DNA of 64,000 nt from Octopus bimaculoides. Its lineage: Eukaryota. The stretch's first letter is position 1. Every line of letters starts with the position of its first letter. The stretch covers positions 7,359,479 to 7,423,478 of the forward strand of contig NC_068992.1 of assembly GCF_001194135.2 (NCBI RefSeq). The letters are read 5' to 3'. The notes below the pieces were generated by a model that was not told the origin of the DNA, searched no databases, and was given only the letters and a program-made list of their open reading frames with translations. A program made the translations under genes and the position numbers. This document shows, piece after piece, positions 29,977 to 54,281 of this stretch.

Positions 29977-30012
<36 letters not shown>

Positions 30013-31775: not shown

Positions 31776-31815
<40 letters not shown>

Positions 31816-32059
31816 NNNNNNNNNNAATAACACCAAATACAGAAATTGTTACTTCAAATAACTAATTATATTAAAAATTTTACTCATTAAAATATATATA
31901 ATTAGAAAAGCACTCAGAGAGCACAGACCTCCGCCAAGCAGCTCATTTTAACATAGATACACGAGTAAAATTACTAATAGAGAAACGAAAATAAACTTTA
32001 GAAACAGCAATTCTTGCTGACACAAACCACTCCAGTCTCATTGACTTCTGTTTTGTGTG

Positions 32060-32290
32060 TGTGTGTGTTTGTGACTTTTTTACTGGTTTCAGTCATTGAA
32101 CTGCAGCCATACTGGGACACTATCTTGAAGAGTTTTAGTCAAATGAATCAACCTCAGTACTTGTGTTTAAACTTGGTACTTTGTCTCTTTTGTCAAACTG
32201 TTAAATCATAGAAACATCAGCAAATTAACACCAGTTGTCAAGTGGTGGGTAAGGACAAACACAAAAACACACACATAGAGATATATACAA

Positions 32291-32326
<36 letters not shown>

Positions 32327-32930
32327 ATAACAGGCTTCTTTCAGTTTCCATCTACCAAATCNNNNNNNNNNNNNNNNNNNNNNNNNNNNNNNNNNNNNNN
32401 NNNNNNNNNNNNNNNNNNNNNNNNNNNNNNNNNNNNNNNNNNNNNNNNNNNNNNNNNNNNNNNNNNNNNNNNNNNNNNNNNNNNNNNNNNNNNNNNNNNN
32501 NNNNNNNNNNNNNNNNNNNNNNNNNNNNNNNNNNNNNNNNNNNNNNNNNNNNNNNNNNNNNNNNNNNNNNNNNNNNNNNNNNNNNNNNNNNNNNNNNNNN
32601 NNNNNNNNNNNNNNNNNNNNNNNNNNNNNNNNNNTCTATTGGTCTCTTTTGCTAAACCGCTAAGTTATGGGGATGTAAACACACCACCATCGGTTGTCAA
32701 GCGATGTTGGGGGACAAACACAGACACACAAACATATACACACACATACATATATATACATATATGCGATGAGCTTCTTTCAGTTTCTGTCTACCAAATC
32801 CACTCACAAGGCTTTGGTCGTCCTGAGGCTATAGTAGAAGACACTTGCCCAAGGTGCCACGCAGTGTGAATGAACCCGGAACCATGTGGTTGGTAAGCAA
32901 GCTACTTACCACACAGCCACTCCTGCGCCT
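32060..32930 (-). mobile_element. Two tandem SINE family B copies separated by an N gap
   Basis: 32060-32361 and 32635-32930 both match the family B consensus. Confidence 0.75.
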
Positions 32931-33809
32931 GTGTATATAATATTTGTATTTACTAAACTTTGTGTATGAAAAATAACCAAGTGCTCAATATGCATTTGTG
33001 TTAGAAATGTGTAGAGTCTGTATTAACTGTGTGTTGTTAAGCAAGATTATTTCCTCCTATCAAATGACTTTGTACAGTTGACTAATGTCTGAAATAATGG
33101 ATATGGAAAAGTAGACAGAGTATTCAAAAGTATTTTTGATTGATTGTGTGGCTGGTGGCTGGTGGCTGGTAGCTAGTGGCAGGTAGCTAGTGGCAGGATT
33201 GGTTTGTGGTGTTATTGATGAAATTCACTCTCTTCATAAGTATTAGCAGGTGATTCAACTTTAGATATGATCAGAACTGACCAACCACATCACAAACCAC
33301 TCAACCAATCAAAAGGCACCCAACAACTTTTAAATACCCTGACTACCAATCCATTTCCATTATTTCAGACTCACTGATTAATATGGTTGACTGATGTCAA
33401 CTGCACAAAACATTTAGATATAATCAAATAATCCACTTCACCATATTATATATGTATGTGTGTGTGTGTGTGTGTGCGTGTGTGTGCGTATGTGTGTGTA
33501 CGTGTGTGTGTGTAGATAGATAGATAGATAGATAGATAATGTATATTTGCTTCCCCTGTATTTTTAGGAATATCAAATTTCTGAAGTCCTGCCATATTAT
33601 GTAATGTTATAATGCAAAACACATTTTTATTGACTCCAATATTTGTTTATTTCTATGTTACATGGAAGTCAAAAGGTTATGGGTGTCATGTATTGGAATT
33701 TCTGCATTTGAGGAACATGGTTTTATTTAATATGAGGGATTCCTGCATAATATATATGCATATATATATATATCATCATCATCTTTATTTAATATCCATT
33801 TTCCATGCC

Positions 33810-33855
<46 letters not shown>

Positions 33856-34344
33856 TATATAGATAGGGTGATAAATTGAATATTAATTCAATTTAAAACC
33901 AAGTGGCCTAGCCTATAAAAAAATCTGAAAATTCAGAAAAAATTGTATTATGTGTATAAGCGATGACCACTAGGTGGACATCCAATATGCTAGAAAGAGG
34001 TCATCAACGACCCAACCACAAAGAAAAATAATGTTCTCCAGAAAAAATTTTGCAAAACACCACAACAGGACGTAACCACATCTGTGTTCTCGTCAGCACA
34101 ACCATTCTAGAATCAATATAATTTGCAGAACTATACACAAATTGTCTTCATGAAATAAGACTTGCATACAGTTCTACCGATTACATTGGGGTTATTTTTC
34201 AAGAAGGTGCACAAGAAGGTTAACAGAGAAAGTAATCTATACCTGGCAGATGTGCAGGTGCATTAAACACTAGGAATGTACAGAAAATAGACTTCCTCTA
34301 ATGTCCAGGAGATTCTTAGAAGTAGTAGACAGTTTCTGTTAGTT

Positions 34345-34800
34345 AGGCAACCAAGTTAGCAGGGGAGGAGGTAGTTCTGTAGGCATAACTGCTATAATGT
34401 GAAAAGGCTAGGCAAAGTTCAGAGAGCTATCTTTGTTAGTAGGAAAGAGTCTCTCCTTCACAGTGAAAGATAAATTGTATGGTGGCCTGTGTACTAACAG
34501 CTGTGCTACATTGCAGTGAGACATGGGCTGTGAATACTGAGGACATGCAAAGGCTTGAAAGAAATGAAACCAGCACGCTCTGCTGGATGGGTAATGTGTG
34601 TGTGTATGTATGACAGAGTGTGAGTTGAGAGAAAAATTGGGTGTATGAGACGTCAGATGTAGTGTGCAAGAGAGAGGACTACACTAGTATGGTCATGTGA
34701 TGCATATGGACAAGGACAGCTGCATCAAGAAGTGCTGGTCTCTAATTGCAGAGTGAATGTGTGGAAGGGGTAGACCCAGAAAGACATGGAAAGGTAAAAT
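34345..34800 (+). mobile_element. RTE LINE fragment (C-terminal ORF2 region)
   Basis: Nucleotide similarity to the reverse complement of about 58880-59350, for example gaggacatgcaaaggcttgaaagaaatgaa, ggtcatgtgatgcatatggac and ggaaggggtagacccagaaagacatgg. Confidence 0.8.
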
Positions 34801-34974
34801 GCTGATCCCTGATGTATTTTAAATGAAAGACAAAACTAGTTGGTTTACTCATTTTCAGCTACCAAAAACCCTTTTCTTCATATTAGGGGCCTATTTTCAC
34901 AGCAAGTGCAAACAAGTTTACTAAACATGGTATGACACATGACTTTATGTACATATCTATATCTACATATCTAT

Positions 34975-35041
<67 letters not shown>

Positions 35042-36485
35042 NNNNNNNNNNTACATGCATACACACACACACACACATACATACATACATATATATATTT
35101 GGCATCTCAATAGATGATTGGCTTATACACATACCAATCAAAGCTTATTAAAAGCAAGATGAAACTAAAACTAATAGTCATTTCCTTTGTGCTTAATAAC
35201 TAATAACTAATCGCAGAAATATCAACATGTAATATTTTTCTTATTTCTGTGTCTGTTATGTTGAAACATTCACCAACACCAACTTCATTTGGTTTTTTTT
35301 AATCCATATTTTTCTTTCATCAAACAGAATATTATTTGAATGAGAAAGATAAATAATTTCTACTTAATCATTTTTACTTCTTTTCCAGGTTCTTGTTTGT
35401 CTTATTTATTTTAATTAACATCAGTTTTAATAGATTTTCTTCTTGCTCTTCCACTAATGTTCATTAATATTCTTAGTATTACTTTAATTGACGTGGATGG
35501 AAGTGGAATGCATCTATATATTTGATTCGTCTAAACTTCTGATATAAACTTGTGAAGTAAAGCTCGTTAATATTTCTGTTTTTGATTTTGTTAATAATTT
35601 ATTGACTTTAAACCTATTTCAATTATTTTTGAGTTTTGGGTGTTTTGGGAGTTTTTTTGGGGGGGGGGTTCTTTGTTTTATATTTTTCTTTTGATATTCC
35701 AGTTGTTTGTAGATCCCATCACCCTTTGGAAAAAATAATTTGTATACACATTTCTATTGCTGTTCTAACTTCTGCTGTTTACCATCCTGTTCAGCCTTGG
35801 TCAAGAAGACCTGTAGTCAGGCATTCCAGCCATGACCACAGCATCTTATTTTCAGGTGTATTGCAACGGACACCACATATTCAATGTCTCCTTTGTTTTT
35901 TAAGACAAGGTGTGGCAATTTGCAATTCAAGGGACATTTTGGTGCTATTTTTAGCAAGTTGAATGTCCACACAATTGTCCCTTATTGCCTCATGTATCAT
36001 GTATTTCTCTTTCCCCATGTATTAAGTATCATTTTCTTCTCATACGAAGTGTCTCCCTCTTTACTATACCACCTATGTCAGGTATTTTTGCAAGCACATT
36101 CATATGAGCTTTCTAAATATATATAAGCATAGTGAACCCTTATTTAAAACTATATGATTCATCTAAATTCGAAATCAGCCAAACAGGCATCCACTGGCCA
36201 GCATTTGGTTTTTTTTTCAATTCATTATCGTTTCCTCATTAAAACTGCAGCAATTCATTTTCTGAAGTGAGAGACTTCATTTGCAAATCAAATCCTCATC
36301 ATGATGAGATGCTGTGCCAGGGGAATGAAGTATAATGTGTAGAGAGACCTACAAATAAATTATAGAACTCTATATTTGACAATACATAGAGTATTTAATT
36401 GAAAGCGGTCTTATTTTTTTATACAATAGTACATATCATGCATTGATCAATATGGGCCACTTATATTATTTATTTATTTATATAT

Positions 36486-36834
36486 AGGCATAGGAATGGC
36501 TATGTGATAAGTAGCTTGCTTACCAACCACATGGTTCCGGGTTCAGTCCCACACTGCGTGGCATCTTGGGCAAGTGTCTTCTACTATAGCCTCGGGCCAA
36601 CCAAAGCTTTGTGAGTGAATTTGGTAGACGGAAACTGAAAGAAGCCCGTCGTATATATGTATATATATGTGTGTGTGTGTGTTTGTGTGTATGTGTTTGT
36701 CCCCCAACATCGCTTGACAACCGATGCTGGTGTGTTTACATTCCCGTAACTTAGCGGTTCAGCAAAAGAGACCAATAGAATAAGTACTAGGCTTACAAAG
36801 AATAAGTCCTGGGGTCGATTTGCTCGACTAAAGG
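36486..36834 (+). mobile_element. Near full-length SINE (family B), 3' end in gap
   Basis: ggctatgtgataagtagcttgcttaccaaccacatggttccgggttcagtccca...gggcaagtgtcttctactatagcctcgggcc...gaaactgaaagaagcccgtcg, an internal (TG)n, then cgcttgacaaccgatgctgg...gaataagtactaggctt. Confidence 0.88.
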
Positions 36835-36988
36835 NNNNNNNNNNNNNNNNNNNNNNNNNNNNNNNNNNNNNNNNNNNNNNNNNNNNNNNNNNNNNNNNNN
36901 NNNNNNNNNNNNNNNNNNNNNNNNNNNNNNNNNNNNNNNNNNNNNNNNNNNNNNNNNNNNNNNNNNNNNNNNNNNNNNNNNNNNNNNN

Positions 36989-37033
<45 letters not shown>

Positions 37034-37772
37034 TATGCTTACACATTGAAGTTATATATATATTGTATATCCATATATGTAATATTTATCATATATAAAG
37101 CAGCAAGCTAGCAGAATCATTAACATGCCAGACAAAATGCTTGGTAGCATATCTTTCAAGTGAATGTTTTGAGTCCAAATGCCACCAAGTTGACTTTGTT
37201 TTTGTAGGGTTGATAAAATGAATACCAGATGAGCACACGAGGGTCAATGTACTCGACTTACCCCTTCCCTAAAATTACGAGCCATGTACCAATATTTACC
37301 AATACCGCTCATATATATATATAAAAGCATGGAGATAAATGTTTTAACAAGAGTTGGTATATTTAGTTTAGCCATGTCATGTGAATATACAGTGTGTTCC
37401 TCCATTTCTGATGCTGTCAGGTTGACGTGCAGCCCCTGATGGGATTTCCTTGATGAGTGCTATGTGCCTGTTGTAGAATTTTCATGGGAGAATAACATAG
37501 AGGATTTCTCATTGCCTTCTGGTCATGTATTGTATATGCTCTATGGGAAATAGAATGTGTTGAGAAAGAAAAGAACCGGGTATAGAGTGAACCAAGAATA
37601 AATATTTAAAGAAGGTCTGAGAAACTTAAGCATATTAAAAGACAATCAATGAGGGATTCAAAGAATATTTGAGATGCCTGAGAGAAAATGTCCTGTCAAG
37701 CTATCTGAGCTCTGCTCTTATGAAATAAAAGGACATCATATTATTAAAGAAGGGAAAATACAACAATGATTA

Positions 37773-38051
37773 TACAGTTCTATATTTAAGAGATGAATTA
37801 TGTACATTATTTACATTTGACGGATATTTGTCCTCATCTTGTCTGCTGTTAACACAACGTTTCAGCCGATATACCCTCCAGTCTTCATCAAATGTCTTGG
37901 GGAAATTTTGAATCTGGGTTCTCATTCCTAAGGTATTTTTTGATGTTATTATTATTATCATTATTATTATTGTTGTTGTTGTTCAGGTCACTGCTTGGAA
38001 TTGAACTCAGAATCTTGGGGTTAGTAGCCAGCGCTCTTAACCACTATGCCA
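37773..38051 (-). mobile_element. tRNA-headed SINE with hammerhead-containing 3' module, copy 1
   Basis: Minus strand: TGGCATAGTGGTTAAGAGCGC (A box), GAGTTCAATTCC (B box), (AAC/AAT)n, then GACAT-TTGATGA-A-GACTG-gagggtatat-CGGCT-GAAAC-GTT-GTGTT at 37851-37896. Confidence 0.85.
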
Positions 38052-38061
38052 CTTGTACATT

Positions 38062-38102
<41 letters not shown>

Positions 38103-38103
<1 letters not shown>

Positions 38104-38624
38104 TCATCATCCTCATCATCATCATCGTTTAACGTCCGCTTTCCATGCTAGCATGGGTTGGACGATTTGACTGAGGACTGGTGAAACCGGATGGCAACAC
38201 CAGCCTCCAATCTGATTTGGCAGAGTTTCTACAGCTGGATGCCCTTCCTAACGCCAACCANNNNNNNNNNNNNNNNNNNNNNNNNNNNNNNNNNNNNNNN
38301 NNNNNNNNNNNNNNNNNNNNNNNNNNNNNNNNNNNNNNNNNNNNNNNNNNNNNNNNNNNNNNNNNNNNNNNNNNNNNNNNNNNNNNNNNNNNNNNNNNNN
38401 NNNNNNNNNNNNNNNNNNNNNNNNNNNNNNNNNNNNNNNNNNNNNNNNNNNNNNNNNNNNNNNNNNNNNNNNNNNNNNNNNNNNNNNNNNNNNNNNNGCC
38501 AGTCAGGCGGTACTGGCAACAGCTACGCTCAAAATGGTGTATTTTATGTGCCACCCGCACAAGAGCCAGTCTAGAGGCACTGGCAATGTTCTCGCTCGAA
38601 AATCCTACGAAGGCCAGTCAGGCG

Positions 38625-38628
<4 letters not shown>
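38103..38628 (-). mobile_element. RTE 3' UTR and tail copy interrupted by a gap
   Basis: catcatcgtttaacgtccgctttccatgctagcatgggttggacg... plus gccagtcaggcggtactggc repeat units. Confidence 0.8.
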
Positions 38629-38659
<31 letters not shown>

Positions 38660-39218
38660 TCGGATTTGTGTGAATTCGATTTATTCAATAACAAGGGGTA
38701 GAAATAAATGCGTGTAAAGATTTTCATAGCAAAAGTGTGTATAGAAATAAATTTGAATAGAAACAAATGTATATAGAAAACTTTGTGTGCATTAAAAAAA
38801 TGTAGTATTTATATATACAGGCATCGTGTAAAGTCTATCAAAATAAGATGAGCTAAGCTTAGTGTTTCTAAATATATTTGAGTATAACAAAAATGTGTAT
38901 CTATATATGAAGCTTCTTGTATATCTATACCATAAGTTTCATTCAGATGGCAAAACTATACGCAATTAATTCTCTCATTAGTTATTTTTTTCTAAATGTA
39001 TCTGTTTTCTCTTTAACTGTCATCTCTGAATGCTTTCTCCAATTTTGATTTGTTGATAAATGTAGAGGATGGATCTGATAATTTACTGAATGTCTTTTTC
39101 TCTTTCCATAATATTTGTTTTATTGTGGAATTAGGATGGCAGCATATAAAATATTAGTGGTGTATTTCGGTAATTCTTGCTATATTTTGCTAATTCTTTT
39201 CTGAATTTTATGCATATA

Positions 39219-39267
<49 letters not shown>

Positions 39268-39683
39268 ATATTTTCCTTTGAGTTTTATTTAAGTTCCTCT
39301 TAAGAGAGTTCAAGCCAGTCACTAGTAAAGCGACAAGACTGTTTGAGTTTGTAGATATGCGGCAGTGTTGGTGTGTTAGTTGAGCTGCCAGTGCTCACAC
39401 CCAAATGTGTGCATCTATTCACCTAAAGAATCTCAGATGGAGAATCTTTGGAATGTCTAACAAATCTTCCTTGTGCTGCTAATAGATTGGATGATTCAAA
39501 GAATTCACATCATCTTCTTTTGCTCTTTCTTCAAACAATGCGGCTAACCCCTGAGGGTGAATGCTACTGTTGCTTTTAGCCCCAGGAGAACATCTCCTCC
39601 AGCTGGCTATTGACACACTTTCTGTGCCTTGTTGGTATTTGCAAAGGGAAGTCATCCTTCCCATCATCGATCTGACGAGATAC

Positions 39684-39726
39684 GCACGGACCCAGGTTTC
39701 TGGGTATTTACCTTTCGTCAGTGTAC
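39684..39726 (-). ncRNA. Degenerate minimal hammerhead motif
   Basis: Minus strand: GTACA-CTGACGA-AAGGT-AAAT-ACCCA-GAAAC-CTGG-GTC-CGTGC. The core is intact but there are mismatches at the base of stems I and II. ACCTGGGT is one transition away from the palindrome ACCCGGGT. Confidence 0.5.
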
Positions 39727-39850
39727 AACAATCACTGATCTTCAATGCGAAGGGCTCCCAATGCAAATACATATATCTTTTTTGCAGTGACGAAAATTCA
39801 CTGATCTCAAAAAAGTGTAAACAAGCAATAATAAATCTCTGAACGAGGTA

Positions 39851-39882
39851 TAAACAGTAGTTGCACGTGCAGCTACTGTTTA
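39851..39882. repeat. 32-bp near-perfect palindrome
   Basis: taaacagtagttgcacgtgcagctactgttta; 15 of 16 pairs are Watson-Crick, with one T.G. It abuts an N gap. Confidence 0.9.
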
Positions 39883-40710
39883 NNNNNNNNNNNNNNNNNN
39901 NNNNNNNNNNNNNNNNNNNNNNNNNNNNNNNNNNNNNNNNNNNNNNNNNNNNNNNNNNNNNNNNNNNNNNNNNNNNNNNNNNNNNNNNNNNNNNNNNNNN
40001 NNNNNNNNNNNNNNNNNNNNNNNNNNNNNNNNNNNNNNNNNNNNNNNNNNNNNNNNNNNNNNNNNNNNNNNNNNNNNNNNNNNNNNNNNNNNNNNNNNNN
40101 NNNNNNNNNNNNNNNNNNNNNNNNNNNNNNNNNNNNNNNNNNNNNNNNNNNNNNNNNNNNNNNNNNNNNNNNNNNNNNNNNNNNNNNNNNNNNNNNNNNN
40201 NNNNNNNNNNNNTAAATAATTTGTTAAATTCAAAAGTTATATCATTAGTGTGTTGTTGAGTTTCATTGTTGTCAAAGAAAAAGGTGAGCCATCTGATATG
40301 GTTGATAAATATTTTGTATAATATATAAATAAATAAATGGAGTTAAATGCAGGTGTTATTCAAATTCTTTCACTTCCGACACATGTTTCACATAATGCCG
40401 GAGTTTCTACCTTTAAAAACAAGTAGTGTTAAATGAAATATTTTGTAATATTTTTTGTCCACTACTAAAACAGTGAGCTGGCTCAATCATTAGATGCCAG
40501 GCAAAATGTTTAGCAGTATTTTCTCCATTTTTACATTCTGAGTTCAAATTCCTCCAAGGTTGACCTTGCCTTTCATCATTTTGAGGTTGATAAAATAAGT
40601 ACCAATTGAATGTAATTGACTTACCCCTTCCCCCGAACTTACTGGTCTTGTGCCAAATTTTGAGACAAACATTTCATCAAAAGCTCTATAAAGATTCTTC
40701 ACATGTTTGT

Positions 40711-40945
40711 GAAGGTGTGTTGACTAATGGTTTAAGATCATGGATCAGTTCCTGGACTGGATGGTGTGTTCTTGAGCAAGACACTTCATTTCATATTGCT
40801 CCAGTCCATGCTGCTGTGAATGAGTTCCAGTAAAAGCTGGGAAGTTAACCTTGTGATGGACTGGCATCTCATTTAGTGGGAACGGTTGTCATTTCAGTTG
40901 ATTAGACACTGCAGAAACCGGTTAAACTCTGGCTTTACGGGTCCT
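40711..40945 (+). mobile_element. Diverged SINE family C copy
   Basis: Core gtgtgttcttgagcaagacacttcatttcatattgctccagtcca and tail gatggactggc...gaaaccgg. Confidence 0.7.
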
Positions 40946-41362
40946 AGGGTACATACATATTCATGCATACATGTATCCATGCATACACATGCACATAGAT
41001 ATGACAATATATTTATATATATATATACATATATACACACATGTACGCATACACACACACAAATATATATAAGGACTATTTATAAATATACAATACATAC
41101 AAATATACTCGTACATACACCTTACACATACAGATAGATGGACAAACCTACATATATATATTTATATGTTTATTTATTTATGTATTTATTTATTATTAAC
41201 AATTATTTTTGTTAACCCTGATATTATCCTGTTGTTATTTTTCTTATGCTCTTGTCATTATTTGTGAATTATTTTTCTCCAAATTATATTTTACCTTGTT
41301 CTCAGCCCAATTCACATCTAATTATTTGCTTTTTTTTTCTTTTCTCGCATCTGCATGCACAG

Positions 41363-41386
41363 CTACAACCAACAATATCCGACGCG
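41363..41386 (+). CDS. 24-nt microexon of the same Ig gene (A-TTNNIRR-G)
   Basis: Long T-rich tract with a ctaat branch-like site, then tttctttctcgcatctgcatgcacag|CTACAACCAACAATATCCGACGCG|gtaagc. Phase 1-1 matches the Ig exon donor, giving ...EVLN-A-TTNNIRR-G. This resembles the VLNA-x-x-N-x-x-(K/R)R-G linker I recall after Ig2 in this family. Confidence 0.75.
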
Positions 41387-41645
41387 GTAAGCAAAACCTT
41401 TTCTGTTTCTTTGCATCTCATTTTCATTTGTTTTTATTTTTATTTTCATCTTTATTTTTGGCATGGGAGTTGTTTAATTCATTTATATATTGTTTCTTTT
41501 TTGTTTGCATTGAAATTTTACCTCAGTTAACCCCCTTTGTAAATTTTGGTATTTTTTTTTTTTATATTCCCCTAAAATATTTAAGTTATAAAATTGCTTC
41601 TTAAAATGGGGGAGGTTGAAAGCATTTTCAATTAACAACTACATT

Positions 41646-41687
<42 letters not shown>

Positions 41688-41799
41688 TATATATATATGT
41701 ATATAAACATACACACATAGTGTGTGTATAGAATGTTTTTATATATATTATATATGTATATGTACACGTATGTATGTATGTATGTTTATATAGTTTTGC

Positions 41800-42415
41800 C
41801 ATACATCATCCTGTAATGAACCTGGACTAATCATCAATGATGGCCACTGAGGTCATTAGACATTTTGGGTCTTTCAACATGACCCTTTTTCACTTGAATG
41901 ACCCAGCTGGGATTGATCAAGCCCAAGCTTGTGTCCTGTCAGCACTAAGCTTGGTAGCCCCTTTCCTTCACCACCAGGGCTGGCACCTCATGATCCACAG
42001 CCACCTTGAGGCAACCTCTGCCTTCCAATGACTGGCCCCTGTGATACCCAGCATGTTGTAGGCTCTGCAGAGAGATCAGCCTGCAAACTTTGAGTATCCC
42101 ACCTTAATGGGATCACACCTTGCATGCTCTGGCATAGCTCTACCAGCTCAGCATATTACGTTTATTTTCTCTCATTTACCTCCTTAATTCGGGTCTCCCA
42201 GAGAATGAAGAATTCTAATAGAATCATGTGCTTGGACGCTTCCAAGATCAGCACCATTTCCAACCTTTGTGATGATGCTGCAGTAACAGTTTCTGGAAAC
42301 TTCAGCTAATTCCCCAGAGTGATTTCCAGCTTCCAGGTTTTTACTGCTGCGTGTAGGCCTGGGGAAACAAACTTGGCAGCTGGTACTGTTGTCGCACCAT
42401 CGCGACAAAGGTGCT
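41800..42415 (-). mobile_element. 3' fragment of a HERO-like non-LTR retrotransposon (restriction-like endonuclease domain plus 3' UTR), decayed
   Basis: Minus strand reads LKFPETVTAASSQRLEMVLILEASKHMILLEFFILWETRIKEVNERK*T*YAELVELCQ, then after a frameshift KVGYSKFAG*SLCRAYNMLGITGAS...ASRWLWIMRCQPW. This matches the recalled RLE C-terminus LKFP...RPDIV...ELTVPWE...EVGCRGF...RWLW. The PD catalytic motif is mutated. Confidence 0.72.
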
Positions 42416-42419
42416 ACGT

Positions 42420-42553
42420 ATATAAATGCAGAGATACACACATATATATATTTACATATACATGTATATGTGCATTTGTGTATCTATGTGTGTGTGTGTC
42501 TTTCTCTCTATATGTATATATGTTTGTGTGTATATATACATATTGTGTGTGTA

Positions 42554-42612
<59 letters not shown>

Positions 42613-42707
42613 TGTATATATATGGATATACATGCATGTATACATATATTGTGTCTGTGTGTATATATATGTATGAATATTTCTTGTATATATCTATGTC
42701 TATATAT

Positions 42708-42740
<33 letters not shown>

Positions 42741-42756
42741 ATTATATATAATTATA

Positions 42757-42791
<35 letters not shown>

Positions 42792-42900
42792 CATACATAC
42801 ATATGTTAGATTATACAGATTGCAGATATGTATATATGTATATGTATGTATATATATATGCATATATACCTACACACCCACAAATATATAAGTATGTATA
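42420..42900. repeat. Long degenerate (TA)/(TG) microsatellite field
   Basis: Read directly; it is the source of several spurious ORFs. Confidence 0.9.
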
Positions 42901-43221
42901 ATAAATATGTGTATGCTTGTGTGTCTGTGTGTATATTTTTATTATGAATATATCTTCTAGAACGATAAGAGCTTTTCAAGTCTCACAGCTTTCATGAAAG
43001 CTAGATGATTTTTATATCTGTACTCTACAGACATCGTGGGAAATGAAACTTCAGTTTCATCATGAGATTTATATTTAAATTTTATATCATTTATATATCA
43101 TTTATATGCTCTACATTCTAAAATATGTTGAGTTCTATTTTTTTTTTTTTTGTTAGAAAATTGTGTTTGTGTGCATATATATAAAGATCTTTTATAGATT
43201 AAGTTTGCCATATCTCTCCTT

Positions 43222-43333
<112 letters not shown>

Positions 43334-44512
43334 AATCTATCCATTCAAGCAACTTATTGTAATTTAATGATGATAATACAAATTGCAAAATGAAACACAT
43401 TCTTAATTTGGAAACAGTGGTGATTGAAATTATTTTATGTAAATTGATAATTCCCTTTACAAAGAAAATTTTCAATCATCACCATTTTCTAATTTATGCA
43501 GAATTCACAGATGTTTACATATTTACCACAATGAAATCACAGTTCCTAAATTTTACAGAAAAATGGGTGGGTTTGTTGGTCAGCACATTTACCATGAAAA
43601 GAAGGGGTGTGGGTTTGATTCCTACACATATTGATACCCTTCTTTTTTCATGATGGGGATTTGCCCTTTTACTACACTAGTCATTATACAGTGAGGGCTT
43701 TTAATTCTGTTTACAAAAGAACTTTTCAGTTGCCACTATTTCCTAGTTCATACAGGATTTGCACATGTTTGCATATTTTCAATTTATTTTCAGGCATTTT
43801 TTTTTATAGATATAATATTCTAATTATGAGACAATAAATGTAATCATAAGAAAATACTTATTCAGAAAATAAAAGAATTCATTTTTATCCATGATTATAT
43901 GCAATATCTCAAAAATATCCAATGATGTCTCTATTTACATAGTTCATCACACCAGTTCAAATTCTTTTTGTAGAATTAAAACTATTTATGTTCTTTGGCT
44001 TAAGGGGAGCTGCATTTTGTAAAAGATACTTTTATGACACAACATTTTTTGTAACCAACATGTATTAAACATAAACAGCAACACATATATATGGCCTCCT
44101 CTTTCATTTTTATGTAACAGACAATGCAGAAAATCTTTTAACTTTACATTGCTTGTAGTTTTGGGAATCAGTGCTTTAGTGTTAGCTACAATTATTTCTA
44201 ATTTGAGCACAAGACTGAGGAGAAAGACAGTTTATTCCATTAGGTCCAGTACTATATTGGTTCTTTACTTTATTGACCCTGGTGGGATGAAAGGTAAAAT
44301 TGACCTCAGCAGGATTTGAACTCAAAACATAAAGAGCCATGACAAATACAACAAGGAACTTTTTCAGATGCTCTGCTGATTCTACCAAACTACCAATCTT
44401 TTGTTTGTTACAGTAAAATTCTTTCTAAGATGACTTTCGTTTTCCTCCCTCAGTGCATAGGAATTTAGTGTCCTAAATATCCATTATAATTGTTAGTAAT
44501 TGAATACAATGA

Positions 44513-44566
<54 letters not shown>

Positions 44567-45183
44567 CCCCAGAGCAGGTTTTAACTGATTTTAATCTTTA
44601 TTCATTAACAAATGACCATTGATCAAATTCACAAGTTTGTATTTACTGAGTTGCCGTTTGAAGACTAAGCAATTTAATGTATCAGTCCTAAGTATTATTA
44701 TGTCTGCAAATATAACACATAATTATTTTTGCCAATTTCTTTGCAAAATGTTATATTTCAACAAATATTCTGCTTTTGTTTGGTTTTTCTTCTTATTTTT
44801 TTTTTCAACTAATAATTTTTTTACCAATTTCTTTCAACAAGTTTGTTTTTCTAGGAATATGTTTTTCTACAAATATAACTTTGACAAATTATGTTTCTTC
44901 TAATAATTATTTTGATAAATGTTCTCAACGAACATACCGAGAATCATATCAGTATATTTGTGTGTGTGCATACAGACATATGTGTGTGTGGATGTAGATG
45001 TGCATGTGTGTATATGTGTGTGTGGGTGTATGTGTGCGTGTCAGTGTGTATTTATGAATAAAGTGTGTGTGTGTGTGTATATATTTATGTATAAAGTGTA
45101 CATATGTATATATATATTTGTATATATCTATATATATGTATATGTATATAAGTATATGTATATAAGTATATGTATATGTGTGT

Positions 45184-45415
45184 GGAGATGTGTGGTTTAT
45201 TGGTTGGTGTATTGTACTCATGATGGTAAGATTGTGACTTTGATTCCTGGACAAAGTGCTGCATTATATTCTTGACCAAAACACTTCATTTCACATGGCT
45301 CCTCTCCATGCAGCAAAAATGAGTGTTCCTGCAATAGGCTGGTATCCAACCCAGAGAAGAAATAACACCACACAGTCCAAGAAACCAGCTTTAGGAGCTT
45401 AATGCTTGCAAAAGA
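45184..45415 (+). mobile_element. Diverged SINE family C copy
   Basis: catgatggtaagattgtgactttgattcctggac...aaaacacttcatttcac...gcaaaaatgagt. Confidence 0.7.
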
Positions 45416-45478
45416 CCTTTGATCCTCTTTTTTTATATATAATATAATCATATATATATGTGTGTATTTATATGTATA

Positions 45479-45510
<32 letters not shown>

Positions 45511-47337
45511 NNNNNNNNNNNNNNNNNNNNNNNNNNNNNNNNNNNNNNNNNNNNNNNNNNNNNNNNNNNNNNNNNNNNNNNNNNNNNNNNNNNNNNNNNN
45601 NNNNNNNNNNNNNNNNNNNNNNNNNNNNNNNNNNNNNNNNNNNNNNNNNNNNNNNNNNNNNNNNNNNNNNNNNNNNNNNNNNNNNNNNNNNNNNNNNNNN
45701 NNNNNNNNNNNNNNNNNNNNNNNNNNNNNNNNNNNNNNNNNNNNNNNNNNNNNNNNNNNNNNNNNNNNNNNNNNNNNNNNNNNNNNNNNNNNNNNNNNNN
45801 NNNNNNNNNNNNNNNNNNNNNNNNNNNNNNNNNNNNNNNNNNNNNNNNNNNNNNNNNNNNNNNNNNNNNNNNNNNNNNNNNNNNNNNNNNNNNNNNNNNN
45901 NNNNNNNNNNNNNNNNNNNNNNNNNNNNNNNNNNNNNNNNNNNNNNNNNNNNNNNNNNNNNNNNNNNNNNNNNNNNATATATATATATATATACGTATAT
46001 ATATAATACAAACATATATACCCACACACACACATACATACATCTATCTACATAACAGCCCACTAACTATTCTACTCTACCTGTGTAAACTGTGGGTGTG
46101 GAGGTATAATATCTACTATGTATATTTCCTGTTTAGTATTGGGAAAGTTTCATTTATAAGGATGTACTCCCGTATTTATCTGAGTGTTGGGTCTTTTGGG
46201 TGCTTGGATAAGATGCAGATGTCAAGTTGACCCAAGTTTCCTCCATGGTGGTCTTTGGCATGTTGATAGCGTATGGAGGACTGTTTTTTGTCATCATATT
46301 GTCCACACATATGGAGATGCACATCCATACATACAAACATGGTACATAGTTTCAAAACTCACACACACACAGACATGCACACACAATGAGACAGAGGTGC
46401 ATACATATACAAACATACGCTCACACACACATACATAAAAAATACACAAACATGGACTATCATTCAACCAAAATATTCAGTGGCCAAAAGCATATATTTC
46501 TTGTAACAGTATCATATGAGTTTATATTTTTTATTAATATATACCCTGATAAATTTATTTGCTACAACTAGTCAAATTCTATCAGCTTGAAAGAAAAATG
46601 CACAACGGATAATGTAGTTCTTAAAAATAACACAAGATGATCATAATTGGAATGCTTTTGATCATAAGCCTGTTCAGTGAGGGCCAGCCTTGGGCTAAAC
46701 AATATTGACTATATTCATTTGTTCAGAGATATTTACAATGTCAATTCCTAGCTTACTTAAACCGGTTGCTAACAAAAGATGCTTACTCAATGTTGTACCA
46801 TAGAAAAAGAAAAACAAGAAAAATAGCTGAAGAATCCAATTATTGGTTGTCTCTTTCCAAGCTACTTGTTGTTACTTTATATTTATATATGCCTGAGATT
46901 ATTCGCTGCCATCTTCAATTCTTGGCAAAATAGACAGTGAAGGATGTCCATTGAAGGATGGTAAATATTATATATAATGAAGGATGGTAATATTTATGTA
47001 TAATGAATATTATGCATAATGAGGCATTTCTAGTTTTGACATTTATCTTCCTCAGTTTTTGGTGTTGTACAACAAATTATACGGACTCATCATCATTGTC
47101 ATCATCATTTTAATATCCCCCCCCCCATTTCCATGCTTGCTTTGGTCAAGCAGAATTCCATGAGGCAGATTTTTCCACAGTTGGATGCCCTTCCTGTCAC
47201 CAACCCTCACCTGTTTCCATATAAGGTAATATTTTTCCTTTGACTGAATAATAATGTTTTAGAGGAAGATTGGAAATGAAGGGCACTGCTTGTATGATGA
47301 TAACATTTATTTACAACTTCATGCGATGTCAAGACAA

Positions 47338-47426
<89 letters not shown>

Positions 47427-48119
47427 TGCACATACACAGATATACAATTAGCTTCTTTCAGTTTCTGTCTACTAAATTCACTTGCAACACTTTGGTCAGC
47501 TTAGGGCTTTAGTAGAAGACATTTGACAAACTTGCCACAGAGTGCGACTGAAACTCAAATAAGAGGTGTAAATTGGTGTGGCATGAGAAATAACAATGAG
47601 CAGATGACCCCCAACTTCTTTTCACCTCTTAGTTTTATATTTCCTACTCAGTTCATAGTAACATGTGGCCATTATTATCGTACCACTTCTAGTCCCCTTT
47701 TTCTTATATGAAATGTGTGTTTGATTTCCAGTAAAAATAAGGCGTTAATTGTTCAGATACAACTGGACTAACTTTCAAAAACATCACATGATGTTATGTT
47801 CCTACTTGTAATTATTTTTTTCTTATAATTATTCCTTCATATTATTATTATTATTATTATTATTCAGTACTCTTATTTTTATTATGCGCATTCAGTATAC
47901 TATTGAATACAACACTGTATGCCTTGGCTACGTGTAGTGACTTGTTTTGGTTTTGTAATTTCTATTATATTAACAGTACCATGTGTGTGGTGTCTAATAG
48001 TATTGTTTTCTGTATGTTGTTCACATTAGTAAATCCTTTGGTTTTGCTTATATATTTGTCTGCATGTTTTTTAATCATTCTAAAAGCATGTCTACAGGTT
48101 GTTTTGTTTACAGTTTTCA

Positions 48120-48350
48120 TTATTTACACTTGACGAATATTTGTCCTCACCTTGTTTGTTGTTAACACAATGTTTCGGCTGATATACCCTCCAGCCTTCA
48201 TCAGGTGTCTTGGGCAAATTTCGAACCTGGGTTCTCATTCCTAAGGTATTTTTTGATGTTGTTGTTATTGTTCAGGTCACTGTCTGGAATCGAACTCAGA
48301 ATCTTGGGGTTAGTAGCCCACGCTCTTAAGCACTACACCATATACCCATG
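48120..48350 (-). mobile_element. tRNA-headed SINE with hammerhead-containing 3' module, copy 2
   Basis: Same head and body as copy 1. The motif GACAC-CTGATGA-A-GGCTG-gagggtatat-CAGCC-GAAAC-ATT-GTGTT is at 48164-48209. Confidence 0.85.
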
Positions 48351-48686
48351 GGCATTATAGAAAAGTGGACATTAAATGATGATGATGTAAGATATGAGCA
48401 GAGATACTTAATAAGATTCTGACGAAGCTGTAAAAATATCTAATTGGCTCAGTGAAGTAAAAAAAAAAAAATACAAAAGCAAAAAAAAAACGTTAACCTT
48501 TTTTTTTATTATATTTCTGTTGAAATATATTATTGTTGTTTTAATTCAATTTTATAAATTAGTAAAATACATCGTCATTATGAAGGTGGTATTTGAAACA
48601 TAACATGAAATGTTGATGGATGGTTTCAAAGCACACTTTAAAACAAGATCTGTACATCATACAACCAGGAGCAGTGTCAGGTGAGT

Positions 48687-48975
48687 TGGCATAGTAGTTA
48701 AGAGCACGGGCTACTAACCCCAAGATTCCAAGTTCGATTCCAGGCAATGACCTGAATAATAATAATAATGATGATGATGATGATGATGATGATAATAACA
48801 ACAACAACATTGAAAAATACCTTAGGAATGAGAACTCAGTTTCGAAATTTCCCCCAAGACACCTGAAGAAGGCTGGAGGGTATATCAGCCAAAACGTTGT
48901 GTTAACAACAAACAAGATGAGGACAAATATCCATCAAATGTACATAATTCCTCATCTCTTAGATATAGAAATGTA
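48687..48975 (+). mobile_element. tRNA-headed SINE with hammerhead-containing 3' module, copy 3
   Basis: TGGCATAGTAGTTAAGAGC, AAGTTCGATTCC, (AAT/GAT/AAC)n, then GACAC-CTGAAGA-A-GGCTG-gagggtatat-CAGCC-AAAAC-GTT-GTGTT at 48858-48903. Confidence 0.85.
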
Positions 48976-49816
48976 TTACAGTTTTCTTGTTCTGATGTTC
49001 TCTATTTTCAGATATTGATGTTTACATAATTTCTCCATCTCTTTTAGAGATACATTATTATTTGTTCAGGTAACACTTCCATTAGGAGGTACCTTGTTTC
49101 CTAGTTGTCATTGATAGCAATATTTGGCTAATCATTCTTGTTCTTCCTGCCTGAATGGATTGGCATACCCCAAAGTATGGTTGCTTTGTCATTCTTTAAG
49201 ACTCATTCCAACGTATATTCACACCACTTCTTTTCTGCTGCTGTTTCATTATGCCAGCATAACTCCGACAGAATAAAGAATCTTTCAGTTTTGAGTCCTT
49301 CTTAACCAGTATTATGATTTTCCTTTGTTTATTTCCTCCTTGTTCAGTTTCTCTTCTCAGGCATTACTCATCTAGGGGCTTTTTTCTGTTTTTTGCTATC
49401 ACTTAAGCATAACATCCTCTGGACCATTTTCCTAACTTAAGTTTTTCACAACTTCTGTTACTCTTTTTCCTTTCTTCTCACAACTACCTATTATTTCAGC
49501 CTCTATTTTGTACTTGTTTGCTATTTTGAAAATGGAAAACCAATTTTTTTTTTATATATTTTGTTGTGCTTGCACCTATATAAAATGTAACAAAACCTAC
49601 AGTTGATCAGTAATTGATTTTGACAGCCATATGAATCTTTGCAGCAACCTTTCTGCACTTTTAGAAACAAGTTGGATTTCTTTTTGGTTTGTTTCCTTTG
49701 CTAGATTTTTAGTTATTCTCTTTGATATTATTACAGTTAAAGCTTTGTAAGTAGTAGAATGATAGCTTATAGGTCTGTAAGTTTTAGATTTTATTTGTTT
49801 CTTTTAGTTTTACAAA

Positions 49817-50029
49817 TTAACCCTTTCCATACCAACTCACCTGACACTGCTCCTGGTTGTATGATGTACAGATCTTGTCTTAAAGTGCGCTTTAAAACCT
49901 TCCATCAAAATTTCATGTTGTTTCAAATACCACCTTCATAATGGTGATGTATTTTACTAATTTATAAAATTGAATTAAAACAACAATAATGTATTTCAAC
50001 AGAAATATAGTAAAAAAAAAAAAGGTTAA
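49817..50029 (+). mobile_element. TTAA-flanked MITE (piggyBac-like ends)
   Basis: Begins TTAA-CCCTTT (49817) and ends AAAGG-TTAA (50029), with no ORF. Confidence 0.6.
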
Positions 50030-50326
50030 TTTTTTTTTTTGCTTTTGTCATTCTTTTTTTTACTTCACTGAGCCAATTAGATATTTTTACAGCTTCATCA
50101 GTATCTTATTAAGTATCTCTGCTCATATCTTACATCATCATCATTTAATGTCCACTTTTCCATACTTGCGAATGAGACAGAATTTGCTGAAGCAGATTCC
50201 CAACAGCTGGATGCCTTTCCTGTTGCCAATCCTGACCTGTTTCCAAGGCCAGATATGTTTCATACAGAAAACTGGAAATGAACAATATTACTTGTATGAT
50301 GCACATTTACAACCATCAAGACAAGG

Positions 50327-50391
<65 letters not shown>

Positions 50392-51339
50392 NNNNNNNNN
50401 NNNNNNNNNNNNNNNNNNNNNNNNNNNNNNNNNNNNNNNNNNNNNNNNNNNNNNNNNNNNNNNNNNNNNNNNNNNNNNNNNNNNNNNNNNNNNNNNNNNN
50501 NNNNNNNNNNNNNNNNNNNNNNNNNNNNNNNNNNNNNNNNNNNNNNNNNNNNNNNNNNNNNNNNNNNNNNNNNNNNNNNNNNNNNNNNNNNNNNNNNNNN
50601 NNNNNNNNNNNNNNNNCCACCCACAATTGTTCAGATAATGTTTGTTATTTTGAGCAAATACTGTCTATCACAATTACTTCACTCTCCATAAATCTATCTC
50701 TCTAGAATTCCTCTATTTTGCTTGCCATTAGTGCTGTGATGATTTCTATTTTGTTTTTACCTAGTTCTTGATAAAAATTGTTTGAAACTGGATTCTAACT
50801 GTTCAAAGAAGCACTGCCACTTTTCAAACTACCAGATTCTTTGTGATTTAGCAATTTTTTTTAGTTTTATTTATTCCTTTGTTTTATTTTTTTGTATGGG
50901 GTGTCATTCTTTCATTGTTATTTCTGTTGTATTTCTCTTGTCTTCTTTCTCTTTTTTTCTCTTAATTCTTATCCATTTCTGTATGTTTCTTTTCCATGTT
51001 GTTTGTTTTGATTTGGATTTTGCTGTATTACTTTAGTACCCAATTACCTTTCTAATTTACAGTGGCTGCTGTATATTCTTAAACCTTTCTTTTTTTTATT
51101 CTTTTTTATCCATATTATTGTTGGTGCTGTTCGATCTCATTTTTGTTGGTCAGTATTATATAGGGTTAGTATTTGTCTTATTTCTTTGTTTTCTGTGTTC
51201 TAGTTCTGTCTTCATGATTTATGTCTTAAATGTTTATTATTTTTGTTGTTTGTTTTCTGTTTTGTAAATTGTGTTTCCATTTTGTATTCTTTCTTTTCAA
51301 GTGTTCTGTTTCACTTTCTGACAGATATTTGGCTTTCAG

Positions 51340-51375
<36 letters not shown>

Positions 51376-51384
51376 GTTATTGCT

Positions 51385-52105: not shown

Positions 52106-52137
<32 letters not shown>

Positions 52138-53498: not shown

Positions 53499-53537
<39 letters not shown>

Positions 53538-54011: not shown

Positions 54012-54044
<33 letters not shown>

Positions 54045-54200: not shown

Positions 54201-54281
54201 TGCCATGTTTAAATACCCTGATAATTATTCTATTATTCTAGTCTGCTTCCCTTTCATTATACACCCTTATATTATCAACTC

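What the first reader, a model, noticed from the sequence alone, without database searches (positions are those of the whole stretch)
41300..41392. 24-nt frame-preserving microexon with UGC/UGCAUG motifs at the 3' splice site
The acceptor context ...gcatcTGCATGCacag has two UGC trinucleotides (41352-54, 41356-58) between the pyrimidine tract and the AG, overlapping a UGCAUG Rbfox element. A further GCAUG lies at about 41461. UGC next to the 3' splice site is the established signature of neural microexons regulated by eMIC-domain proteins (SRRM3/4, Srrm234). The exon is invisible to the ORF track, and because it is symmetric (phase 1-1) it can be skipped without a frameshift.
Basis: partly seen in the sequence, partly recalled or inferred. 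Interest (0 to 1): 0.7.

Follow-up and report, generated by a model that had tools for sequence, protein, structure and literature searches.

The report
Annotated 24-nt exon of octopus Dpr-like gene
The 24-base segment is a real coding microexon, already in the public annotation of an Octopus bimaculoides Dpr/ZIG-8-type neuronal adhesion gene and conserved across molluscs, but every transcript or isoform I could find includes it, so its proposed brain-specific regulation remains untested.

Summary
Window 41363-41386 (+) is a 24-nt, phase 1-1 exon flanked by cacAG and GTAAGC. UGC lies at 41352 and 41356, UGCAUG at 41352, and GCAUG at 41461.

The exon is real. The window carries two exons of Octopus bimaculoides LOC106868246 (RefSeq XP_052828029.1, 305 aa), a two-Ig protein whose best solved relatives are Drosophila Dprs. 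Ig2 (12516-12803) ends AATG|gt. The microexon encodes residues 254-261, ATTNNIRR, 28.6 kb downstream.

Conservation is deep:
- O. sinensis has the same eight residues.
- Transcripts of another cephalopod carry ATTHNTRR, 20 of 24 nt identical.
- Two Lottia paralogues have a 24-nt phase 1-1 exon at the same place.
- The motif A-x-[ST]-x-N-[VI]-[KR]-R follows Ig2 in nearly all the gastropod, bivalve and cephalopod homologues listed that reach that point.

The regulatory reading is only partly supported. The 3' splice site has the published eMIC-type layout: CUAAU branch site, 24-nt pyrimidine-rich tract, then UGCs before the AG, a 57-nt AG-free zone and a strong donor. However, the exon is present in 20 of 20 assembled cephalopod isoforms and in all RefSeq isoforms of seven mollusc genes. 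The variable parts are neighbouring small cassettes. The Lottia exons have no UGC near the AG. No tissue RNA-seq could be examined. This is an already annotated exon of modest interest.

The parts
41363..41386 (+). 24-nt coding microexon, CTACAACCAACAATATCCGACGCG, phase 1-1. It encodes (A)TTNNIRR(G), residues 254-261 of XP_052828029.1.
   Evidence: tblastn of P0170 residues 254-265 at 41362-97; 20/24 nt identical to the exon in transcript L006
41318..41362 (+). 3' splice-site region. It holds a CTAAT branch-site consensus (41318-22), a 24-nt pyrimidine-rich tract (41324-47), TGC at 41327, 41352 and 41356, TGCATG at 41352-57, and the AG at 41361-62. The previous AG is at 41304, giving a 57-nt AG-free zone.
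   Evidence: architecture compared with PMC8797185
41387..41392 (+). 5' splice site, G|GTAAGC. There are 6 consecutive matches to CAG|GTAAGT, from -1 to +5.
   Evidence: donor score 6.1; only 8 GT sites on the + strand reach 6.0
41461..41465 (+). GCATG, 75 nt downstream of the donor. It is a possible Rbfox-type site and was not tested.
12516..12803 (+). Upstream exon: the Ig2 domain, 288 nt, phase 1-1, ending AATG|gtaggc. It encodes residues 158-253 of XP_052828029.1 at 100% identity.
12804..41362 (+). Intron of 28,559 nt between the Ig2 exon and the microexon. It contains SINE copies, microsatellites and assembly gaps.
41387..64000 (+). Start of the downstream intron. The next coding exon (GPRNEKNHQ...FLEP) is not in the window, so this intron is longer than 22.6 kb.

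Best explanation
Window 41363-41386 is a genuine coding microexon that is already annotated. It belongs to Octopus bimaculoides LOC106868246, a two-Ig-domain cell-surface protein of the Dpr/ZIG-8 family. It is spliced between the Ig2 exon (12516-12803) and a last exon that lies beyond the window.

It adds eight residues, ATTNNIRR, to the stalk between Ig2 and the hydrophobic C-terminal tail. This is the octopus form of a motif, A-x-[ST]-x-N-[VI]-[KR]-R, that follows Ig2 in this protein family across molluscs. In Lottia the motif is encoded by a 24-nt phase 1-1 exon at the same position, so the exon predates the cephalopod-gastropod split.

In all isoforms available it is included, so it behaves as a constitutive exon of this gene. 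The alternative splicing in this region happens in small neighbouring cassettes.

Shown: the exon's existence, phase, coding content and conservation, and its constant presence in known isoforms.

Inferred: in octopus the exon sits between introns of 28.6 kb and more than 22.6 kb. It is probably recognised through its strong donor plus a distal CUAAU branch site, a long pyrimidine tract and UGC motifs just before the AG. That layout is the one that recruits the eMIC form of Srrm234 in neurons of other bilaterians. If the gene is neuron-restricted like its fly and worm relatives, the exon could depend on eMIC and still look constitutive.
For: -: P0170 is XP_052828029.1 [Octopus bimaculoides]; its residues 158-253 match window 12515-12802 at 100%, and residues 254-262 (ATTNNIRRG) match 41362-41388.
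- O. sinensis XP_029643349.2 has an identical ATTNNIRR.
- RNA-seq contigs of another cephalopod read AAT G|GT ATG GTT GCA GAG AAA G|CT ACG ACA CAC AAT ACC CGA CGC G|GT ATT.... The 24-nt unit is 20/24 identical to the window, and CCGACGCG, with its three CpGs and both Arg codons, is unchanged.
- the unit is present in 20 of 20 isoforms. GMVAEK, GIGA[DE]R and the Ig2 exon vary.
- two Lottia genes have cag|CGGAGACAATAAATGTTAAACGTG|gtaagc and cag|CTGATTCTTCTAATGTTAAAAGAG|gtaaga after an Ig2 exon.
- the motif is conserved in gastropods, bivalves and cephalopods.
- every RefSeq isoform of seven mollusc genes keeps the unit, while flanking cassettes vary.
- the best solved relatives are Dpr4 (E 1.6e-24), Dpr2, Dpr10 and Dpr6. 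ZIG-8 scores 1.7e-6.
- splice-site strength, the CpG island and the rarity of the UGC pair.
Against: - No RNA-seq of O. bimaculoides tissues was examined. The RefSeq protein is a computed model, and assembled contigs and RefSeq isoform sets can miss minor skipped forms.
- The tissue of origin of the cephalopod RNA-seq runs is unknown. If the gene is expressed only in neurons, 'constitutive' and 'neural' cannot be told apart.
- The recognition mechanism (branch site, UGC, eMIC) is inferred from sequence only. Conservation of the intronic motifs in other octopods could not be checked.
- The splice-site matrices used were generic and written from memory.
Confidence: 0.8

Rival explanations
1. The exon would be a switch-like alternative cassette, included in neurons through eMIC-domain Srrm234 binding the UGC motifs and skipped elsewhere. 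Skipping would give an in-frame isoform that lacks the eight residues.
For: - The exon is 24 nt long and in symmetric phase.
- Two UGCs lie at -11 and -7 between the pyrimidine tract and the AG. This configuration is seen at 1% of AGs in the window.
- There is a CUAAU site 41 nt upstream, a 57-nt AG-free zone and a strong donor.
- The same feature set is published for eMIC targets in fly and mammals (PMC8797185). A UGC between branch point and AG is present in 74-79% of SRRM3/4-dependent human microexons.
Against: - No isoform without the exon appears among 20 cephalopod transcript isoforms, the single RefSeq products of two Octopus species, or the isoform sets of seven mollusc homologues.
- Those same data sets do reveal other small alternative cassettes right next to it, so the sampling is able to detect such events.
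- The homologous Lottia exons lack UGC near the AG.
Confidence: 0.2
2. The exon would be controlled by Rbfox through the UGCAUG that overlaps the 3' splice site and the GCAUG 75 nt downstream.
For: TGCATG lies at 41352-57 and GCATG at 41461-65. RBFOX has been reported to regulate micro-exons in human brain; this rests only on the title of Li et al. 2015 as listed in the references of PMC8797185.
Against: - On my own knowledge of Rbfox RNA maps, an upstream site usually represses and a downstream site enhances. The two sites therefore point in opposite directions.
- GCATG occurs 66 times on this strand of the window, about once per kb, so one copy within 100 nt is unremarkable.
- Neither Lottia exon has (U)GCAUG in the flanks that were read.
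- There is no evidence of skipping.
Confidence: 0.1
3. A chance pseudo-exon: an AG...GT pair in a long intron that happens to be open in frame.
For: Long AT-rich introns hold many decoy sites. There are 156 short AG..GT pairs with positive scores in the window.
Against: The encoded peptide is part of annotated proteins in two Octopus species and is conserved at the same position in other molluscs, with the same exon length and phase.
Confidence: 0.01

Closest known systems
RefSeq gene model LOC106868246 / XP_052828029.1 (Octopus bimaculoides), with its orthologue LOC115217806 / XP_029643349.2 (O. sinensis)
   Same: This is the same exon. Residues 254-261, ATTNNIRR, directly follow the Ig2 exon of the window.
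   Different: The annotation names the protein 'uncharacterized'. No paper in the searched library mentions the locus. An older 2015 model (XP_014768900.1, 147 aa) lacked this part. The O. sinensis model carries an extra 41-residue segment that was not found in the window.
eMIC-dependent neural microexons (SRRM3/4 in vertebrates, Srrm234 in other bilaterians)
   Same: The length is 27 nt or less and the exon preserves the frame. UGC motifs lie between the pyrimidine tract and the AG. There is a long AG-free zone, a CUAAY branch-site consensus and a strong donor (PMC8797185; bioRxiv 10.1101/2024.09.17.613571).
   Different: No skipping was seen in any available isoform. Neural specificity and dependence on the factor were not tested. 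The homologous Lottia exons lack the UGC signature.
Drosophila Dpr proteins and C. elegans ZIG-8 (two-Ig neuronal surface proteins that bind DIPs / RIG-5)
   Same: There are two Ig domains (Pfam). The best solved-structure matches are Dpr4, Dpr2, Dpr10, Dpr6, Dpr1 and Dpr11, then DIPs and ZIG-8. NCBI names many mollusc homologues 'zwei Ig domain protein zig-8-like' or 'lachesin-like'.
   Different: Orthology to a particular Dpr was not established. I did not examine whether fly or worm genes have an equivalent 24-nt exon or an NVKR-type motif after Ig2. Every named homologue carrying the motif was a mollusc.
Neighbouring alternative mini-cassettes in the same gene family
   Same: All are short, phase 1-1 and located in the Ig2-to-tail stalk. 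Examples are the 18-nt GMVAEK and GIGA[DE]R cassettes in another cephalopod, GGGNLN in Ruditapes, YIRLYGKG in Gigantopelta and a 17-residue cassette in Babylonia.
   Different: Those cassettes are variably included, while the 24-nt exon is always included. No counterpart of the two 18-nt cephalopod cassettes was found in the window.

Membership tests
eMIC (SRRM3/4, Srrm234)-dependent neural microexon | Very short exon (27 nt or less, or 51 nt or less), usually frame-preserving | tested here: met
   24 nt, phase 1-1
eMIC (SRRM3/4, Srrm234)-dependent neural microexon | UGC motif between the pyrimidine tract or branch point and the AG, close to the 3' splice site | tested here: met
   TGC at 41352 and 41356 (-11 and -7). 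Two or more TGC in the last 15 nt occurs at 1.0% of AGs. Both come from one 7-mer, TGCATGC.
eMIC (SRRM3/4, Srrm234)-dependent neural microexon | Long AG exclusion zone or branch point-to-AG distance, long pyrimidine tract, strong branch-site consensus | tested here: met
   Previous AG at 41304 (57 nt). CTAAT at 41318-22. The tract at 41324-47 is 22 of 24 pyrimidines. The branch site is predicted only.
eMIC (SRRM3/4, Srrm234)-dependent neural microexon | Alternative inclusion: skipped outside neurons | tested here: not met
   Tested by proxy only. The exon is present in 20/20 cephalopod transcript isoforms, in both Octopus RefSeq products and in all isoforms of 7 mollusc homologues. No tissue-resolved RNA-seq was available.
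eMIC (SRRM3/4, Srrm234)-dependent neural microexon | Inclusion depends on the eMIC-domain protein | not testable with these tools
   Needs knock-down or knock-out, or a minigene co-expression assay.
eMIC (SRRM3/4, Srrm234)-dependent neural microexon | Conservation of the intronic UGC in orthologues | tested here: inconclusive
   Two Lottia paralogues lack UGC in the last 40-50 nt. No other cephalopod genomic sequence could be obtained.
Dpr / ZIG-8 family of two-Ig proteins | Two Ig domains (V-like Ig1 plus Ig2) in a protein of about 300 residues | tested here: met
   Pfam gives I-set/V-set at 45-139 and Ig_3/ig at 165-245 of P0170.
Dpr / ZIG-8 family of two-Ig proteins | Closest sequence relatives are Dprs / ZIG-8 rather than other IgSF proteins | tested here: met
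   PDB search: Dpr4 1.6e-24, Dpr2 1.4e-20, Dpr10, Dpr6, Dpr1 and Dpr11 all rank above DIPs, DSCAM and NCAM. ZIG-8 scores 1.7e-6.
Dpr / ZIG-8 family of two-Ig proteins | Membrane attachment by a C-terminal hydrophobic signal (GPI or TM), and binding to a DIP/RIG-5 partner | not tested
   The hydrophobic tail ...RKWWIVFGFMSLLYQNGVTFLEP is seen in P0170. No predictor or binding data were used.
Rbfox-regulated exon | (U)GCAUG in the flanking introns, conserved, with a position-dependent effect | tested here: inconclusive
   The motifs are present at 41352 and 41461. Conservation and effect were not testable. GCATG occurs about once per kb in the window.

The most novel reading that the evidence does not exclude
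The 24-nt exon would be an ancestral Srrm234-eMIC-dependent microexon of the protostome Dpr/ZIG-8 family. It would have been kept for more than 500 million years because its conserved dibasic end (KR or RR followed by Gly) is a processing or shedding site that releases the two-Ig ectodomain from its membrane anchor. The variable mini-cassettes on either side would tune access to that site. This would tie the neural microexon programme to control of synaptic-specificity receptors.
Probability: 0.08. Interest if true: 0.6.

Novelty: already known. Interest (0 to 1): 0.25.

Why it matters
The result shows that a tool-free reader can pick a true 24-nt exon out of a 28-kb intron from splice-site and phase logic alone. 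Biologically the exon is ordinary, because it is already in RefSeq.

The comparative picture that came out of the check appears not to have been described. A fixed 24-nt, phase 1-1 exon encoding A-x-[ST]-x-N-[VI]-[KR]-R follows Ig2 in mollusc Dpr/ZIG-8-like genes, and lineage-specific alternative mini-cassettes lie on either side of it. If the octopus 3' splice-site layout really reflects eMIC dependence, this exon would be a handy lophotrochozoan test case. It could show how a microexon that is constitutive in a neuronal gene relates to the neural microexon programme.

Tried and rejected
- **Word-indexed protein search with the Ig2 exon.** It returned only two genomic fragments, P0001 and P0002. 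Searches showed these to be unspliced genomic contigs of related species, so they gave no junction information.
- **Search with the intronic ORFs that overlap the microexon.** I concatenated their translations, hoping to pull orthologous genomic contigs from other octopods and test conservation of the UGC motifs. There were 1358 candidates and none scored.
- **Fetching genomic DNA of homologous genes.** The O. sinensis gene (548 kb), Argonauta (166 kb), Gigantopelta (157 kb), Haliotis cracherodii (299 kb) and H. rufescens (148 kb) all exceed the 100-kb limit. Two look-ups failed because only the longest isoform is on record. Only the two Lottia genes gave DNA.
- **Looking in the window for the 18-nt cassettes GMVAEK and GIGADR.** I searched by approximate DNA match and by listing all phase-1-open AG..GT mini-exons. 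There was no convincing candidate. The cassettes may be lineage-specific, may lie in assembly gaps (4549 N in the window) or may lie beyond it.
- **Looking for the other exons of the gene.** The last exon, the Ig1 exons and the extra O. sinensis segment are not in the window.
- **Repeat origin of the exon.** Rejected by self-BLAST.
- **Literature.** Nothing was found on the locus, on the SRA runs or on Dpr-family microexons. The 2026 preprint that uses O. bimaculoides RNA-seq has no supplementary tables held.
- **Pfam scan of all + strand ORFs.** I prepared it but did not run it, because the homologue route made it unnecessary.

Full report
**What is at the coordinates**

The sequence reads ...tctaattatttgctttttttttcttttctcgcatctgcatgcacag|CTACAACCAACAATATCCGACGCG|gtaagcaaaacc. 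The segment between the AG (41361-62) and the GT (41387-88) is 41363-41386, which is 24 nt. TGC lies at 41327, 41352 and 41356. TGCATG lies at 41352. GCATG lies at 41353 and 41461. The nearest upstream AG is at 41304, and the only CTAAY in the neighbourhood is at 41318.

The window is AT-rich (about 30% G+C) and strongly CpG-depleted (observed/expected 0.29). It is full of microsatellites, assembly gaps (4549 N) and transposon remnants.

**Is it more than chance?**

I scored every AG and GT with generic metazoan splice-site matrices. I wrote these from memory, so they are approximate and were not trained on this species.

- The candidate's acceptor scores 4.3 and its donor 6.1. Both are higher than the scores of the neighbouring Ig exon, which is certainly real (-0.1 and 3.7).
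- On the + strand only 8 GT sites reach the donor score and 75 AG sites reach the acceptor score.
- Only two AG-(3 to 51 nt)-GT pairs on the + strand, and none on the - strand, reach both scores. The candidate is the only one whose length is a multiple of three. It ranks 4th of 156 by summed score.
- The thresholds were set at the candidate's own values, so this shows only that few decoys of equal quality exist.
- Independently, the 24 nt contain three CpGs and are 50% G+C, against 25-31% in the flanks. Only 22 such CpG clusters exist in the 64 kb, and one of them lies in the Ig exon.
- The segment is not part of a repeat within the window.

**Which gene it belongs to**

An open frame at 12470-12811 contains an Ig-domain exon with clear boundaries, tttcag|ATATTT...CTTAATG|gtaggc (12516-12803, 288 nt, phase 1-1).

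An exhaustive profile search with this exon found a family of proteins of about 250-330 residues in which the domain is the second of two Ig domains. One of them, P0015, continues after Ig2 with ...VQVLN GMVAEK ATTHNTRR GIGADR GTRTN.... Translated in phase 1, the window's 24 nt read A-TTNNIRR-(G).

Searching with P0015 returned P0170, which is XP_052828029.1, 'uncharacterized protein LOC106868246 [Octopus bimaculoides]'. Its sequence contains the window's Ig2 exon at 100% identity, followed directly by ATTNNIRRG and then PRNEKNHQKTSSSERSTTISRKWWIVFGFMSLLYQNGVTFLEP. The window is therefore from O. bimaculoides or something nearly identical, and the microexon is already part of the public annotation.

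The O. sinensis orthologue XP_029643349.2 has the same eight residues, and its gene spans about 548 kb. The Ig1 exons and the last exon are not in the window. The microexon therefore lies between an intron of 28,559 nt and one longer than 22.6 kb.

Against solved structures the protein matches Drosophila Dpr4 (E 1.6e-24), Dpr2, Dpr10, Dpr6, Dpr1 and Dpr11 best. DIPs come next, and ZIG-8 scores 1.7e-6. Pfam finds two Ig domains. NCBI names mollusc relatives 'zwei Ig domain protein zig-8-like' or 'lachesin-like'. It is a Dpr/ZIG-8-type protein.

**Evidence from transcripts**

P0015 and its cluster mates come from RNA-seq assemblies (Logan contigs of 1.1-3.7 kb from several SRA runs). They are spliced. 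The corresponding genomic ORFs, P0014 and P0201, run into intron sequence instead.

The nucleotide sequence is ...CTT AAT G|GT ATG GTT GCA GAG AAA G|CT ACG ACA CAC AAT ACC CGA CGC G|GT ATT GGT GCA GAC AGA G|GT ACA.... The 24-nt unit differs from the window at 4 of 24 positions. The last eight bases, CCGACGCG, are identical, including three CpGs and the synonymous positions of both arginine codons.

Three clusters give 20 distinct isoform proteins in all:
- P0015 with 10 members
- P0168, 90% identical to P0015, with 5 members
- P0169, in which Ig2 is skipped, with 5 full-length members.

All 20 contain ATTHNTRR. The 18-nt cassettes GMVAEK and GIGA[DE]R, and the Ig2 exon itself, are present in some isoforms and absent in others.

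**How old the exon is**

Two Lottia gigantea family members were small enough to fetch as DNA.
- In L010 the Ig2 exon ends GCTAAATG|gtaagt. About 550 nt later comes ttcattttctctttcag|CGGAGACAATAAATGTTAAACGTG|gtaagc, encoding (A)ETINVKR.
- In L011 the exon is cctttcag|CTGATTCTTCTAATGTTAAAAGAG|gtaaga, encoding (A)DSSNVKR.

Both are 24 nt and phase 1-1. The motif A-x-[ST]-x-N-[VI]-[KR]-R follows Ig2 in nearly all the listed homologues that extend past Ig2. These include Haliotis, Gigantopelta, Patella, Aplysia, Pomacea, Littorina, Physella, Babylonia, Nucella, Saccostrea, Mizuhopecten, Ruditapes, Mercenaria, Solemya, Sinanodonta and Argonauta. The exon therefore predates the split of cephalopods and gastropods and the duplications within the family.

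In seven mollusc genes with several RefSeq isoforms, every isoform keeps the unit. The differences lie immediately before it (Mizuhopecten) or after it (Babylonia 17 residues, Gigantopelta 8, Ruditapes 6, Haliotis 1).

**The regulatory reading**

Published descriptions of eMIC-dependent exons list the following features: long AG exclusion zones, UGC close to the 3' splice site, long pyrimidine tracts, strong CUAAY branch sites and, in mammals, strong donors (PMC8797185). A UGC between branch point and AG occurs in 74-79% of SRRM3/4-dependent human microexons and is helpful but not strictly required (bioRxiv 10.1101/2024.09.17.613571).

The octopus exon has all of these features: CUAAU 41 nt upstream of the AG, a 24-nt pyrimidine-rich tract (22 of 24), a 57-nt AG-free zone, two UGCs at -11 and -7, and G|GUAAGC. 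Two or more UGCs in the last 15 nt occur at 1.0% of AGs in the window. Among 39 pyrimidine-rich acceptors on the + strand with an AG-free zone of at least 40 nt, exactly one has two UGCs in the last 15 nt, presumably this acceptor. The resemblance is real. One 7-mer, UGCAUGC, accounts for both UGCs and for the UGCAUG, so these are not independent observations.

Several things count against a switch-like alternative exon.
- No isoform lacking it was found anywhere, in data that do reveal neighbouring small cassettes.
- The two Lottia exons use an ordinary pyrimidine-AG acceptor without UGC.
- The upstream UGCAUG would, on my own knowledge of Rbfox position rules, repress rather than promote inclusion.
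- GCAUG occurs about once per kb here.

I could not obtain genomic sequence from another octopod to test conservation of the motifs. I also had no tissue RNA-seq.

**Most likely account**

This is a constitutive, ancient coding microexon of a Dpr-like gene. In the octopus, with its giant introns, the 3' splice site has the distal branch site, pyrimidine tract and UGC arrangement typical of exons helped by the eMIC form of Srrm234. Fly and worm relatives of this protein are neuronal, so the exon may need that factor and still appear constitutive. This last step is inference.

The function of the eight residues is unknown. Their position, in the stalk between Ig2 and the hydrophobic tail, and the invariant dibasic end suggest a processing or recognition site. 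That is speculation.

**Verdict**

The exon is already annotated, so interest is low to modest.

Noticed in passing
L006-L009 and proteins P0015, P0151-P0159, P0168, P0197-P0200 (another cephalopod; not in the window): Two 18-nt phase 1-1 cassettes flank the 24-nt exon and are variably included. They are GTATGGTTGCAGAGAAAG (GMVAEK) before it and GTATTGGTGCAGACAGAG (GIGADR, or GIGAER) after it. No counterpart was found in the window at 4-5 or fewer mismatches, or among phase-1-open AG..GT mini-exons.
   Followed up: partly
proteins P0169, P0202-P0205 (another cephalopod): Some transcript isoforms skip the whole Ig2 exon (...FLNVV|ATTHNTRR... or ...FLNVV|GMVAEK|ATTHNTRR...). This gives a one-Ig protein that still carries the microexon.
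   Followed up: no
P0194 (O. sinensis XP_029643349.2): The model has a 41-residue segment (LPFEAVTLKLEQNSVKFNCLLQAIINYGKTDDYRLCIAEDD) between the microexon and the last exon. It is absent from the O. bimaculoides protein and was not found in the window. It could be an extra exon or a prediction error.
   Followed up: partly
window 41209-41604 (+): The frame containing the microexon is open for 131 codons because the T-rich intron has few stop codons. A second frame is open for 94 codons. These are composition artefacts, not genes, and a protein search with them found nothing.
   Followed up: yes
window 58794-60459 (-): Broken reverse-transcriptase ORFs (Pfam RVT_1, E 2e-08 and 6e-04) sit next to a PHD-finger-like stretch and are interrupted by a microsatellite and an assembly gap. 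This is a degraded non-LTR retrotransposon inside the downstream intron.
   Followed up: partly
window 10720-11494 (-): ORF fragments show a weak DDE_3 transposase match (E 1.4e-03). This looks like a decayed DNA transposon just upstream of the Ig2 exon.
   Followed up: partly
window about 13030-13230, 26470-26900, 36520-36760 (-), 53890-54300, 63709-63981 (-): Repeated copies of one short element give similar pseudo-ORFs (...HAVGLNPEPCGW / RRHLPKVPRSGTEPGTMWLVSKLLTTQP...), usually next to CA/TA microsatellites. They look like SINE-type repeats and account for several of the CpG clusters in the window.
   Followed up: no
mollusc homologues: The eight-residue unit almost always ends in a dibasic pair, often followed by Gly (NVKR|G, NIRR|G, NTRR|G). 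This invariant feature of the stalk could be a convertase-type processing site. It was not tested.
   Followed up: no
window 12516-12530 (+): The Ig2 exon has a second possible acceptor 15 nt inside it (tctcacag|GAAC at 12531), in frame with the first. Homologous proteins align from the first acceptor.
   Followed up: no
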